A DNA stretch of 64,000 nt from Glycera tridactyla (GCA_965644265.1 OZ286463.1:105524001-105588000), one strand, 5' to 3'. Numbered from the stretch's first letter, positions 46,261-47,536 are shown. Notes: generated by a model not told the origin, from the sequence alone. Program-made: numbers and translations.

Positions 46261-46505
46261 TGAAAACTAACTAACTAACTATAGCAAGAATCATCCAAAC
46301 TCGGAAGAGATGAATGAACACAAACTAGCTAACTATAGCAAAAATCATCCAAACTCGGAATAGATGAATGAAAACTAACTAACTATAGCAAGAATCATCC
46401 AAACTCGGAAAAGATGAATGAAAACTGATTAACTAACTATATAAAGAATCATCCAAACTCGCAAGAGATGAATGAAAACTAACTAACTAACTATAGAAAG
46501 AATCA
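46261..46505. repeat. About 50-57-bp tandem repeat, 4.5 units; the fifth unit resumes at 47578-47600 after the palindromic insertion
   Basis: Unit TGAAAACTAACTAACTATAGCAAGAATCATCCAAACTCGGAAGAGATGAA; TCATCCAAACTCGGAGGAGATG reappears at 47578. Confidence 0.9.
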
Positions 46506-46601
46506 ATGTAACTGTGGTTTGATACTGGTCCTTCCAACGTGCTGATAGTGTGGGGTGATGGCCCTTTGCAAAAAATGGGTTGACAATATGCCTAACCAAC
46601 T

Positions 46602-46641
46602 GTCTGACTAGTTTCGCCCAAGTCGGGGCTTCATCAGAGAC
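46602..46641 (-). ncRNA. Minimal type I hammerhead ribozyme (mirror copy)
   Basis: Exact reverse complement of 47395-47434; predicted cleavage 3' of the C at 46606 on the minus strand. Confidence 0.78.
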
Positions 46642-46744
46642 TGAGCCTGTCTGCTTGTGCACTCACTTATATAGTCTGATTGTGTCTGGTTGCTACCTGG
46701 CCCTGATTGGCCGTTGCTGTGCGTGTGCTTGGTTCTGATTGGCT
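46638..46744 (-). promoter_or_regulatory. Mirror Pol II-type promoter (2x CCAAT, TATA, Inr) firing leftwards
   Basis: Reverse complement of 47292-47398. Confidence 0.6.
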
Positions 46745-47291
46745 GATGGTGTGTCCGGTGTGTCCGGTGGTGTCCGGTTCTGTGTGGGGTGTGTCCGGTT
46801 GGGTGTCCGGTGTGTCCGGTTTGTGTCGGAGGTGTCCGGTTTTGTGTCCGGTGTGTCCGGTTAGGTGTCCGGTGTGTCCGGTTTAGTGGTGGTGTGTCCG
46901 GTGTGTGTCCGGTGTCCGGTGGTGTCCGGGTATGTCTTTGTTTACTCCAGTGTCCGGATTTTGGACGCTGAGTGTCCGGTGTGTTTATATTGTGTCCGGT
47001 GTGTCCGGGAATATTCCCGGAATATTCCCGGACACACCGGACACAATATAAACACACCGGACACTCAGCGTCCAAAATCCGGACACTGGAGTAAACAAAG
47101 ACATACCCGGACACCACCGGACACCGGACACACACCGGACACACCACCACTAAACCGGACACACCGGACACCTAACCGGACACACCGGACACAAAACCGG
47201 ACACCTCCGACACAAACCGGACACACCGGACACCCAACCGGACACACCGGACACAGAACCGGACACCACCGGACACACCGGACACACCATC

Positions 47292-47398
47292 AGCCAATCA
47301 GAACCAAGCACACGCACAGCAACGGCCAATCAGGGCCAGGTAGCAACCAGACACAATCAGACTATATAAGTGAGTGCACAAGCAGACAGGCTCAGTCT
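47292..47398 (+). promoter_or_regulatory. Pol II-type promoter: RRCCAATCAG boxes (CCAAT at 47294 and 47326), TATATAAG at 47363, Inr TCAGT with A+1 at 47394
   Basis: Two NF-Y consensus matches lie 32 bp apart and the TATA box starts 31 nt upstream of the Inr adenine, which is canonical spacing. Activity is not demonstrated. Confidence 0.6.
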
Positions 47399-47434
47399 CT
47401 GATGAAGCCCCGACTTGGGCGAAACTAGTCAGAC
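47395..47434 (+). ncRNA. Minimal type I hammerhead ribozyme
   Basis: GUCU[stem I] CUGAUGA A GCCC-cgacuu-GGGC[stem II] GAAA C-UA-G UC^ AGAC[stem I']. All conserved core nucleotides are present. The stem III region is the palindrome ACUAGU, as in dimer-forming minimal hammerheads. GUC cleavage is predicted after 47430. Confidence 0.8.
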
Positions 47435-47536
47435 AGTTGGTTAGGCATATTGTCAACCCATTTTTTGCAAAGGGCCATCACCCCACACTATCAGCACGTT
47501 GGAAGGACCAGTATCAAACCACAGTTACATTGTTAT

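What the first reader, a model, noticed from the sequence alone, without database searches (positions are those of the whole stretch)
46504..47532. 1-kb palindrome encoding two divergent promoter + hammerhead ribozyme cassettes
Seen in sequence: 514-bp inverted arms with two mismatches, each reading outward as CCGGACAC array, CCAAT, CCAAT, TATA, Inr, then a complete hammerhead core with 4-bp stems I and II and a GUC site. Known: minimal type I hammerheads with palindromic stem III cleave as dimers and occur in pseudo-LTRs of Penelope-like elements and in retrozymes; PLE pLTRs can be inverted. Inference: this is an ORF-less, self-cleaving retroelement-like unit in which the two arms would produce near-identical RNAs able to supply each other's dimer partner through ACUAGU. 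I do not recognise this exact architecture as a described family.
Basis: partly seen in the sequence, partly recalled or inferred. Interest (0 to 1): 0.88.

Follow-up and report, generated by a model that had tools for sequence, protein, structure and literature searches.

The report
Head-to-head truncated Penelope-like element insertion
The 1-kb palindrome is real but ordinary: it is two back-to-back, truncated copies of the promoter-plus-ribozyme end of a very abundant Penelope-like jumping gene, an insertion pattern already described for this class of retrotransposon.

Summary
Arms 46504-47017 and 47019-47532 are 514-nt inverted repeats with two adjacent mismatches. Each reads outward through a CCGGACAC array, two CCAAT boxes, a TATA box, an Inr-like site and a minimal type I hammerhead.

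It is not a new ORF-less element. Each arm is the first ~511 nt of a 2,329-bp unit that occurs in tandem and head-to-head arrays, with more than 1,600 candidate copies in this 2-Gb animal genome. That unit is an internally deleted Penelope-like element (PLE). A 5,269-bp relative with the same promoter/hammerhead module encodes RVT_1 and GIY-YIG domains.

The left arm ends at the family's usual 3' terminus (unit 509-513). The right copy runs 47 nt further, to 47579. The pair sits cleanly inside a 54-bp satellite with 0-3 bp of target duplication. Both arms share private variants, so they came from one template.

This matches the published PLE pattern: an inverted 5'-truncated copy, a tail at one end, and both target strands cut and extended. 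The one unusual feature is the exactly symmetric centre, which is unique in the genome. Public read data could neither confirm nor refute the palindrome. Other windows of this genome already carry PLE hammerhead notes.

Verdict: a new member of a known kind, of low interest.

The parts
46206..46503 (+). 50-54-bp satellite array that served as the insertion target (left flank)
   Evidence: Direct-repeat families D1 and D6. The last unit ends ...AGAAAGAA at 46502, and the next unit's TCA begins at 46503.
46504..47014 (-). Left copy: positions 511 to 1 of the 2,329-bp PLE unit, with its sense strand reading leftward. It is 5'-truncated and has the family's canonical 3' terminus.
   Evidence: blastn against the natural reference copy L032:4199-6527 gives 98.8% identity. 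The outer end ...CAGTTACATTG matches the 509-515 class of array ends seen at 10 other loci.
47015..47021 (.). 7-nt centre, TCCCGGA. Together with the arm starts it reads as a duplicated AATATTCCCGG. The junction is symmetric and unique in the genome.
   Evidence: The tandem unit has ...AATAAC before position 1 instead.
47022..47579 (+). Right copy: positions 1 to 558 of the PLE unit. It ends 2 nt after the ATG of the element's ORF.
   Evidence: blastn gives 99.3% identity. The ORF start MSTIGSDE... follows at this point in complete units.
47533..47579 (+). 47-nt tail-like extension present only on the right copy. It contains a small AGCC-UUCG-GGCU hairpin at 47537-47548.
   Evidence: No other family copy ends at unit 556-558.
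47028..47285 (+). CCGGACAC repeat array with ~21-bp period (right arm). The mirror copy lies at 46751-47008.
   Evidence: The array is conserved in the pLTRs of at least 5 PLE families in this genome.
47294..47330 (+). Two GCCAATCA (CCAAT) boxes 32 nt apart. The mirror copies lie at 46706-46742.
   Evidence: D10/D11. Both boxes and their spacing are conserved in most of the aligned families; the degenerate copy L055 has altered boxes.
47363..47370 (+). TATA box, TATATAAG. The mirror copy lies at 46666-46673.
   Evidence: CTATATAA is invariant in 8 aligned pLTRs, with near-constant spacing (within 2 nt) to TCAGTCT.
47392..47434 (+). Inr-like TCAGTC (A at 47394) fused to a minimal type I hammerhead, with predicted cleavage after C47430.
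46602..46644 (-). Mirror hammerhead and Inr-like site of the left copy, with predicted cleavage after the C opposite 46606.
   Evidence: HH9 weak hit at 46585-46650 on the minus strand.
47578..47605 (+). The satellite sequence resumes (TCATCCAAACTCGG...) in the same orientation as the left flank. TC is shared with the end of the element.
   Evidence: Family D6, fifth copy at 89%.

Best explanation
The palindrome is a single, recent, dead-on-arrival insertion of a non-autonomous Penelope-like element (PLE) into a 54-bp satellite. It consists of two 5'-truncated copies joined head to head with their 3' ends pointing outward.

Shown:
- Each arm is the terminal pseudo-LTR part of the family's 2,329-bp unit: CCGGACAC array, CCAAT x2, TATA, Inr-like site, hammerhead, and about 100 nt beyond.
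- The left arm stops at the family's usual 3' terminus.
- Both arms carry the same private variants.
- The flanks are co-linear satellite with 0-3 bp duplicated.

Inferred:
- A PLE RT/GIY-YIG protein supplied in trans cut both strands of the AT-rich target. Autonomous relatives of this family exist in the genome.
- Reverse transcription was primed on both strands from the same RNA species, at an internal initiation site just downstream of the hammerhead.
- The two cDNAs were joined at a short self-complementary stretch (ATAT / CCGG), giving the symmetric centre.

The locus has no coding capacity and cannot transpose by itself. It may still act as two divergent promoters whose transcripts begin at, and could be cut by, the hammerhead. 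The hammerhead would need a second copy of the motif to form helix III.
For: Family membership:
- Arm hits at 99% identity; 1,625 candidates; arrays with a 2,329-bp period and a minus,minus,plus,plus layout.

PLE identity:
- The unit's ORF remnant is 66% identical over 56 aa (E = 1e-21) to the RT-EN linker of the ORF in a 5,269-bp tandem unit. That unit scores RVT_1 at 2e-10 and GIY-YIG at 7e-8. Its pLTR is 83-84% identical to this one.

Canonical 3' end:
- Ten other array ends fall at unit 509-515, reading ...CAGTTACAT(TG) followed by unrelated, mostly AT-rich flank. The left arm ends at 509-511.

Clean insertion:
- The left flank ends ...AAGAAT(CA), the right flank starts (TC)ATCCAAAC, and the two reconstitute one satellite unit boundary.

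One template:
- Both arms share unit 84A and 368G, absent from 12 other distinct copies, and 438C, present in one of the 12.

Literature:
- Inverted 5'-truncated copies, and a 30-40 bp tail often at one end only (PMC8557442).
- A purified PLE protein cleaves and extends both strands, initiates internally at two adjacent sites and prefers ATT sites (PMC11167929).
- Paired min-HHRs 100-700 bp apart on opposite strands (PMC4209133).
Against: - Head-to-head junctions at six other loci of this family are asymmetric: 1008/1765, 949/1715, 160/1027, 519/1004, 464/2095 and ~2300/657. Here both copies begin at exactly unit position 1. That symmetry is unique in the genome and is not predicted by two independent 5' truncations. 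It hints that one arm may have been templated on the other.
- The right end at unit 558 is not a recurrent terminus. In four other arrays the second end lies at ~1400 instead.
- No raw reads were available to verify the structure. Logan contigs showed only the family's tandem form.
- No transcription, cleavage or transposition was observed.
Confidence: 0.72

Rival explanations
1. One ordinary 5'-truncated PLE copy (the right one, unit 1-558) inserted first. The left arm arose later, or during second-strand synthesis, by a fold-back or template switch that copied the right arm from position 1 outward, through replication or repair acting on the DNA.
For: - The centre is exactly symmetric and occurs only at this locus.
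- The arms are near-identical and share private variants.
- Other head-to-head junctions of the family are asymmetric.
- The centre lies in locally self-complementary sequence, GGGAATATTCCC / CCGG.
Against: - The left arm stops at the family's canonical 3' terminus, 509-511. A fold-back copy would hit that point only by chance, roughly 5 positions in 558.
- The flanks are co-linear satellite with no inverted flank duplication or deletion.
- The native unit has only half of the 16-nt palindrome.
Confidence: 0.15
2. One reading: a self-standing, ORF-less, self-cleaving retroelement-like unit of a new architecture, in which the two divergent cassettes exist to provide each other's hammerhead dimer partner.
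For: - Both arms contain a complete promoter-like module and hammerhead.
- ACUAGU is palindromic, which is the dimer-type helix III described in PMC4209133.
Against: - The palindromic form exists once in 2 Gb, so it is not a propagating unit.
- The arms are fragments of a 2,329-bp unit with PLE ORF remnants.
- About 1,600 identical helix III motifs exist elsewhere in the genome.
- The architecture is already described for PLEs.
Confidence: 0.04
3. An assembly artefact, such as a chimeric fold-back long read or a mis-join within a repeat family.
For: - PLE tandem and inverted structures are known to trouble assemblies (PMC8557442).
- No independent read or contig spans the centre or the flanks.
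- The CC/GG dinucleotide difference between the arms could be a polishing error.
Against: - The outer ends differ (511 against 558), and the flanks are not mirrored but continue one satellite in direct orientation.
- The arms carry private variants not seen in the 12 other copies compared. A collapse of repeats would give the majority form instead.
Confidence: 0.05

Closest known systems
Canonical EN+ Penelope-like elements (Penelope/Poseidon, Neptune, Nematis): pseudo-LTRs with inverted 5'-truncated copies and a tail (Evgen'ev & Arkhipova 2005; Craig et al. 2021, PMC8557442)
   Same: - Tandem and partial-tandem arrays.
- Head-to-head inverted copies with their 3' ends outward.
- Variable 5' truncation.
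- An extension at one end only.
- A hammerhead and a promoter inside the pLTR.
- An RT + GIY-YIG ORF in the autonomous relative.
   Different: - This locus holds only the two terminal fragments, with no internal region.
- The two truncation points coincide exactly, making a near-perfect palindrome.
- The extension is 47 nt rather than 30-40 nt, and it is not recurrent in the family.
- The clade (Neptune, Poseidon or other) was not determined.
PLE minimal hammerheads (Cervera & de la Pena 2014, PMC4209133)
   Same: - Type I topology.
- 4-bp helix I.
[quoted passage not shown]
- The G10.1-C11.1 pair.
- A tiny palindromic helix III/loop (ACUAGU), implying action as a dimer.
- Many copies per genome, with covariation between families.
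- Paired motifs 100-700 bp apart on opposite strands.
   Different: - Helix II is 4 bp here, against the 6-8 bp described for several metazoan min-HHR families.
- Helix I and helix III are invariant across the families sampled here.
Poseidon PAc of Anolis carolinensis, in vitro target-primed reverse transcription (Frangieh et al. 2024, PMC11167929)
   Same: - Element ends lie a short distance downstream of the hammerhead, near the ORF start, rather than at an RNA 3' end.
- Flanks are AT-rich and often start with ATT.
- Use of both target strands would give exactly this head-to-head layout.
   Different: - No biochemistry exists for this family.
- Here the usual terminus is ~45 nt upstream of the ATG rather than 111-118 nt inside the ORF.
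- The family has a second recurrent terminus ~890 nt away (unit ~1400), not 30-40 nt away.
Animal non-LTR retrozymes (Cervera & de la Pena 2020; Li et al. 2026 bioRxiv 10.64898/2026.07.22.740005)
   Same: - Non-autonomous, hammerhead-bearing, tandemly repeated derivatives of PLE pLTRs.
   Different: - As I recall, retrozyme units are short (a few hundred bp), and they are thought to act through circular RNAs.
- The family here is a 2.3-kb internally deleted PLE with ORF remnants.
- The locus itself is an inverted pair, not a tandem.

Membership tests
Penelope-like element (EN+ PLE) pseudo-LTR | The family encodes a PLE-type ORF with an RT followed by a GIY-YIG endonuclease | tested here: met
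   The feature is absent at this locus. The 2,329-bp parent unit keeps the ORF start and the RT-EN linker, which is 66% identical to the 5,269-bp unit's ORF. That ORF scores RVT_1 and GIY-YIG. The pLTRs of the two units are 83-84% identical.
Penelope-like element (EN+ PLE) pseudo-LTR | Tandem or partial-tandem copies that form pLTRs | tested here: met
   Arrays with a 2,329-bp period lie on many contigs. The window locus itself is not tandem.
Penelope-like element (EN+ PLE) pseudo-LTR | An inverted 5'-truncated copy adjacent to a direct copy, with 3' ends outward | tested here: met
   In the window, unit 511-to-1 is joined to unit 1-to-558. The same layout, with varied junctions, appears at six other loci.
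Penelope-like element (EN+ PLE) pseudo-LTR | A defined 3' terminus without a poly(A) tail, and an optional 30-40 bp tail at one end | tested here: inconclusive
   The terminus at unit 509-515 recurs (10 loci) and carries no poly(A). The right copy has a 47-nt extension at one end only, but no other copy ends there.
Penelope-like element (EN+ PLE) pseudo-LTR | Insertion into AT-rich or ATT sites with a short target duplication | tested here: inconclusive
   The target is GAA|TCA|TCC within an AT-rich satellite. The duplication is 0-3 bp, and microhomology makes it ambiguous.
Hammerhead ribozyme, type I minimal (PLE-type) | Conserved core: CUGAUGA, GAAA and a cleavable UH site | tested here: met
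   CUGAUGA lies at 47399-405, GAAA at 47421-24, and GUC ends at 47430. The core is invariant in 8 diverged copies.
Hammerhead ribozyme, type I minimal (PLE-type) | Helices I and II maintained, with covariation | tested here: met
   100% of cells pair. Two stem II pairs show compensatory changes (C-G to A-U, and C-G to U-A). Slid controls pair at 18-36%.
Hammerhead ribozyme, type I minimal (PLE-type) | Reaches the Rfam hammerhead gathering score | tested here: not met
   No hit at gathering score. The best hit is HH9 at 13.2 bits against 52. Rfam models expect a real helix III, and min-HHRs are known to escape such descriptors (PMC4209133).
Hammerhead ribozyme, type I minimal (PLE-type) | Self-cleavage, as monomer or dimer | not testable with these tools
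   This needs in vitro transcription, or mapping of 5'-OH and 2',3'-cyclic-phosphate RNA ends. A thermodynamic fold does not favour the hammerhead fold: -9.6 against -12.4 kcal/mol. That comparison is uninformative for hammerheads.
Animal non-LTR retrozyme | A short, ORF-less tandem unit with one hammerhead per unit | tested here: not met
   The parent unit is 2,329 bp with ORF remnants. The locus is an inverted pair and occurs once.

The most novel reading that the evidence does not exclude
The locus may be a fossil of a concerted, dimeric integration step. One PLE ribonucleoprotein would prime cDNA synthesis on both target strands from the same RNA species, and the two cDNA ends would then be joined to each other.

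Three observations bear on this:
- Head-to-head arrays of this family appear always to pair two different termini: unit ~510 with ~1400, and here 511 with 558.
- Both recurrent termini share the motif GTTNNAT^TG next to a small hairpin.
- A conserved TATA-Inr places the transcription start on the first nucleotide of the hammerhead, so the ribozyme would remove the cap and 37 nt from transcripts that the element starts from its own promoter.

If these hold, they would give sequence-level rules for PLE initiation and for the unknown role of the PLE hammerhead.
Probability: 0.2. Interest if true: 0.55.

Novelty: new member of a known kind. Interest (0 to 1): 0.25.

Why it matters
On its own it matters little. 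It is one more truncated insertion of a known class of retrotransposon, and should be annotated as a PLE pLTR fragment pair rather than as a new ribozyme element.

It has modest wider value:
- The family is very young (99% identity) and very abundant. It has clean, recurrent termini and an identifiable autonomous relative, so it is a good natural data set for the still poorly understood PLE integration mechanism.
- Even severely truncated insertions carry a complete outward-facing promoter-like module and a hammerhead. Such insertions could therefore seed transcription into neighbouring host DNA.

Tried and rejected
- **Rfam at gathering score:** nothing in the whole window. At permissive E-values, the strong 'miRNA precursor' hits (MIR2646, MIR7127, mir-466, mir-331) only reflect the long hairpin that any palindrome makes. 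All are below gathering score and were rejected.
- **The mirrored 187-aa ORFs across the centre** (46608-47171 minus, 46865-47428 plus) are translations of the CCGGACAC array. They were rejected as genes.
- **Pfam on the unit's short ORFs:** nothing significant.
- **Is unit 556-558 a recurrent 'tail' terminus?** It is not.
- **Is unit position 1 a recurrent 5' end?** It is not.
- **Source copy:** arrays sharing the 368G variant exist on C1, C17 and C18, but they are less similar to the arms than the main family, so no source was identified.
- **Read check:** only Logan contigs were on offer. They show the family's tandem form and none covers the flanks or the centre, so they give no verdict on the palindrome or on expression.
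- **MFE folding of monomer and dimer** did not reproduce the hammerhead or a helix III duplex, and is uninformative.

Full report
**1. Observation**

The repeat finder reports arms 46504-47017 and 47019-47532: 514 nt each, with one base between them. A direct comparison finds only two mismatches, at 46786-46787 against 47249-47250. The left arm reads GG where the mirror predicts CC. Complementarity stops immediately outside the arms.

Reading the right arm outward gives these features in order:
- a CCGGACAC array with ~21-bp period
- two GCCAATCA boxes at 47294-98 and 47326-30
- TATATAAG at 47363-70
- TCAGTC with its A at 47394, 31 nt after the first T of the TATA box
- a hammerhead core: GUCU / CUGAUGA / A / GCCC-CGACUU-GGGC / GAAA / CUAG / UC, then AGAC, with GUC ending at 47430

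**2. Is the hammerhead real?**

Rfam gives nothing at gathering score. At permissive settings it gives only a 13.2-bit HH9 match. The much stronger 'miRNA' hits are simply the palindrome folding on itself.

Independent evidence for the hammerhead is good:
- The pattern CTGATGA-N8-40-CGAAACTAGTC occurs 1,596 times in the genome, against once for the reversed control.
- It falls into several families whose stem II differs by compensatory changes: GCCC/GGGC, GACC/GGUC and GCUC/GAGC.
- On an alignment of eight diverged copies, every cell of helices I, II and the two-pair helix III is a standard pair. Slid controls give 18-36%. Two stem II pairs change on both sides.
- The bulged nucleotide before stem II, the G10.1-C11.1 pair, the 4-bp helix I and the palindromic ACUAGU are the hallmarks listed for PLE minimal hammerheads (PMC4209133).

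Cleavage itself cannot be tested here.

**3. What the arms are**

One arm finds 1,625 candidate places in the 2.04-Gb genome. The 40 that were scored are 99-100% identical, two of them being the window's own arms. Many are spaced exactly 2,329 bp apart, and many arrays switch strand once, with a minus,minus,plus,plus layout.

I used one natural unit as the reference (L032:4199-6527). Against it, the window matches on the left as unit 511-to-1 (47014-46504) and on the right as unit 1-to-558 (47022-47579). There is no other match in the 64 kb.

The unit contains, in order:
- the arm
- an ATG at 556 that opens the remnant of an ORF (MSTIGSDELADKL...)
- a large internal deletion
- a 104-aa frame with KLPLVTTYGQ...
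- a broken GIY-YIG region

A second hammerhead family has a period of 5,269 bp. Its unit carries a long ORF with RVT_1 (2e-10), followed by the same linker and a GIY-YIG domain (7e-8), plus a separate C2H2 zinc-finger ORF. The 104-aa frame is 66% identical to that linker (E = 1e-21). The two units' pLTRs are 83-84% identical.

The arms are therefore the pseudo-LTR end of an internally deleted, non-autonomous Penelope-like element whose autonomous relatives are present in the same genome.

**4. Ends and target**

Array ends of this family fall into two tight classes:
- unit 509-515 (...CAGTTACAT(TG) then flank), at ten loci
- unit 1398-1402 (...TTTTGTGTTCT(AT) then flank), at eight loci

Neither class carries a poly(A) tail, and the flanks are often AT-rich or begin with ATT.

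The left arm ends at 509-511, so it has the canonical terminus. The right copy runs 47 nt further, to 2 nt past the ORF's ATG. No other copy in the genome ends at unit 556-558.

The left flank is a 50-54-bp satellite (46206-46503). The right flank resumes the same satellite in the same orientation at 47578 (family D6). Joining the flanks restores a satellite unit boundary, GAA|TCA|TCC. Between 0 and 3 bp are duplicated, depending on how the CA and TC microhomologies are assigned.

This is a clean insertion, not a rearrangement of the flanks.

**5. One event, one template**

Compared with 12 other distinct copies, both arms share A at unit 84 and G at 368, which none of the 12 carries, and C at 438, which one of the 12 carries. 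They differ from each other only by the CC/GG dinucleotide in the left arm. Contigs from public runs carry the majority letters at these three places, consistent with the variants being private to this locus.

**6. The centre**

Both copies begin at exactly unit position 1 (ATATTCCCGGACAC...). In tandem units this is preceded by ...AATAAC. Between the two copies lies TCCCGGA, so the top strand reads as a duplicated AATATTCCCGG.

This junction, and any copy whose position 1 is not preceded by C, occurs only here. Six other head-to-head junctions in the family are asymmetric and scattered.

The symmetry is the one feature that the standard picture of two independent 5' truncations does not explain. 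The sequence at the centre is locally self-complementary (GGGAATATTCCC, CCGG, ATAT). This would favour either annealing of two equal cDNA 3' ends or a strand switch. Which of the two happened is inference only.

**7. Comparison with what is known**

- Craig et al. describe PLE insertions as highly 5'-truncated and often partial tandems. They often have an inverted 5'-truncated copy immediately adjacent, and a 30-40 bp tail often at one end only (PMC8557442).
- The same paper states that the pLTR of Penelope harbours the transcription start.
- Cervera and de la Pena found minimal hammerheads in pLTRs and proposed that they act as dimers. They noted paired motifs 100-700 bp apart on opposite strands, attributed to truncated PLEs (PMC4209133). 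Here the two cores are ~760 bp apart.
- Frangieh et al. showed that a purified PLE protein cleaves and extends both target strands. It initiates reverse transcription internally at two adjacent sites that define the tail, and it prefers ATT sites. Hammerhead activity was not needed for insertion in vitro (PMC11167929).
- A 2026 preprint argues that animal retrozymes are non-autonomous PLE derivatives.

The window locus fits this framework point by point. It is not a new architecture.

**8. Function**

The locus cannot encode protein. Because the palindromic form is unique, it has not propagated.

The promoter-like module appears to be under element-level constraint. Across several PLE families that are otherwise ~73% identical, the following are conserved: the CCGGACAC repeats, both GCCAATCA boxes with their spacing, CTATATAA, and a near-constant distance (within 2 nt) to TCAGTCT, which forms the start of hammerhead helix I.

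If the TATA-Inr prediction is right, each arm would start transcription at the first nucleotide of its hammerhead and read out into the satellite. Cleavage would then remove the first 37 nt. No RNA evidence could be obtained. The 'RNA?' runs are guesses and belong to another organism label.

**9. Artefact?**

The evidence argues against a fold-back read or a repeat collapse:
- The flanks are not mirrored.
- The outer ends differ.
- The arms carry private variants.

No raw reads were available, however. The contigs laid on the stretch stop at 47022 and 47579 and continue into the tandem form. I leave about 5% for an artefact.

**10. Verdict**

- The best explanation is a head-to-head, doubly 5'-truncated insertion of a non-autonomous PLE, made during retrotransposition. 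I put this at about 0.7. Within it, the PLE identity of the arms is near certain, and the two-strand priming step is inferred.
- It is a new member of a known kind, of low interest.
- Other windows of this genome already carry notes on PLE hammerheads.

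Noticed in passing
Loci L003, L006, L007, L012, L028, L031, L034, L035 (unit ~1398-1402) against L004, L009, L016-L020, L033, L065, L072 (unit 509-515): The 2,329-bp family has two sharp classes of array end, about 890 nt apart. Both follow a GTTNNAT^TG motif and lie just upstream of a small hairpin (AGCC-UUCG-GGCU, or GGC-UAUAU-GCC). In all four head-to-head arrays where both ends were seen (on C51, C42, C13 and C47), one end is of each class. 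This may reflect two reverse-transcription initiation sites used on the two target strands.
   Followed up: partly
window 47028-47434 and its mirror; L047, L048, L049, L050, L054, L055: Several diverged PLE families share one pLTR module: CCGGACAC repeats, two GCCAATCA boxes about 32 nt apart, and CTATATAA at a near-constant distance (within 2 nt) from TCAGTCT. TCAGTCT is both an Inr-like site and the 5' strand of hammerhead helix I. The predicted transcription start is therefore the first nucleotide of the ribozyme.
   Followed up: partly
L047:1305-1817 (+), repeated at 6575-7087: The 5,269-bp autonomous-type PLE unit carries an extra 170-aa ORF with C2H2 zinc fingers downstream of the RT/GIY-YIG ORF. 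Most of it is missing from the 2,329-bp derivative.
   Followed up: partly
window 46786-46787: The only difference between the arms is a tandem dinucleotide change: GG where the mirror and all other copies predict CC, which destroys one CCGG. It could be a real mutation, a reverse-transcriptase error or a polishing error.
   Followed up: no
window 10336-11635 and 22826-23498: There are long tandem repeats with open frames on both strands (units reading ...MRPVLQYILLCKHSAVLS...). They look like a satellite and not a gene.
   Followed up: no
window 37374-38648 (-), 13992-14897 (+), 44649-45767 (+): There is an intron-less rhodopsin-family GPCR ORF (7tm_1, 1e-24), and two LINE-type RVT_1 fragments. 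One of the fragments lies less than 1 kb upstream of the satellite that received the PLE insertion.
   Followed up: partly
window 46250-47750 against runs X1-X11: Contigs from three organism labels and from marine and marine-sediment metagenomes carry the family's tandem form. This suggests a marine animal, with related elements in its relatives. None of these contigs covers the satellite flanks.
   Followed up: partly
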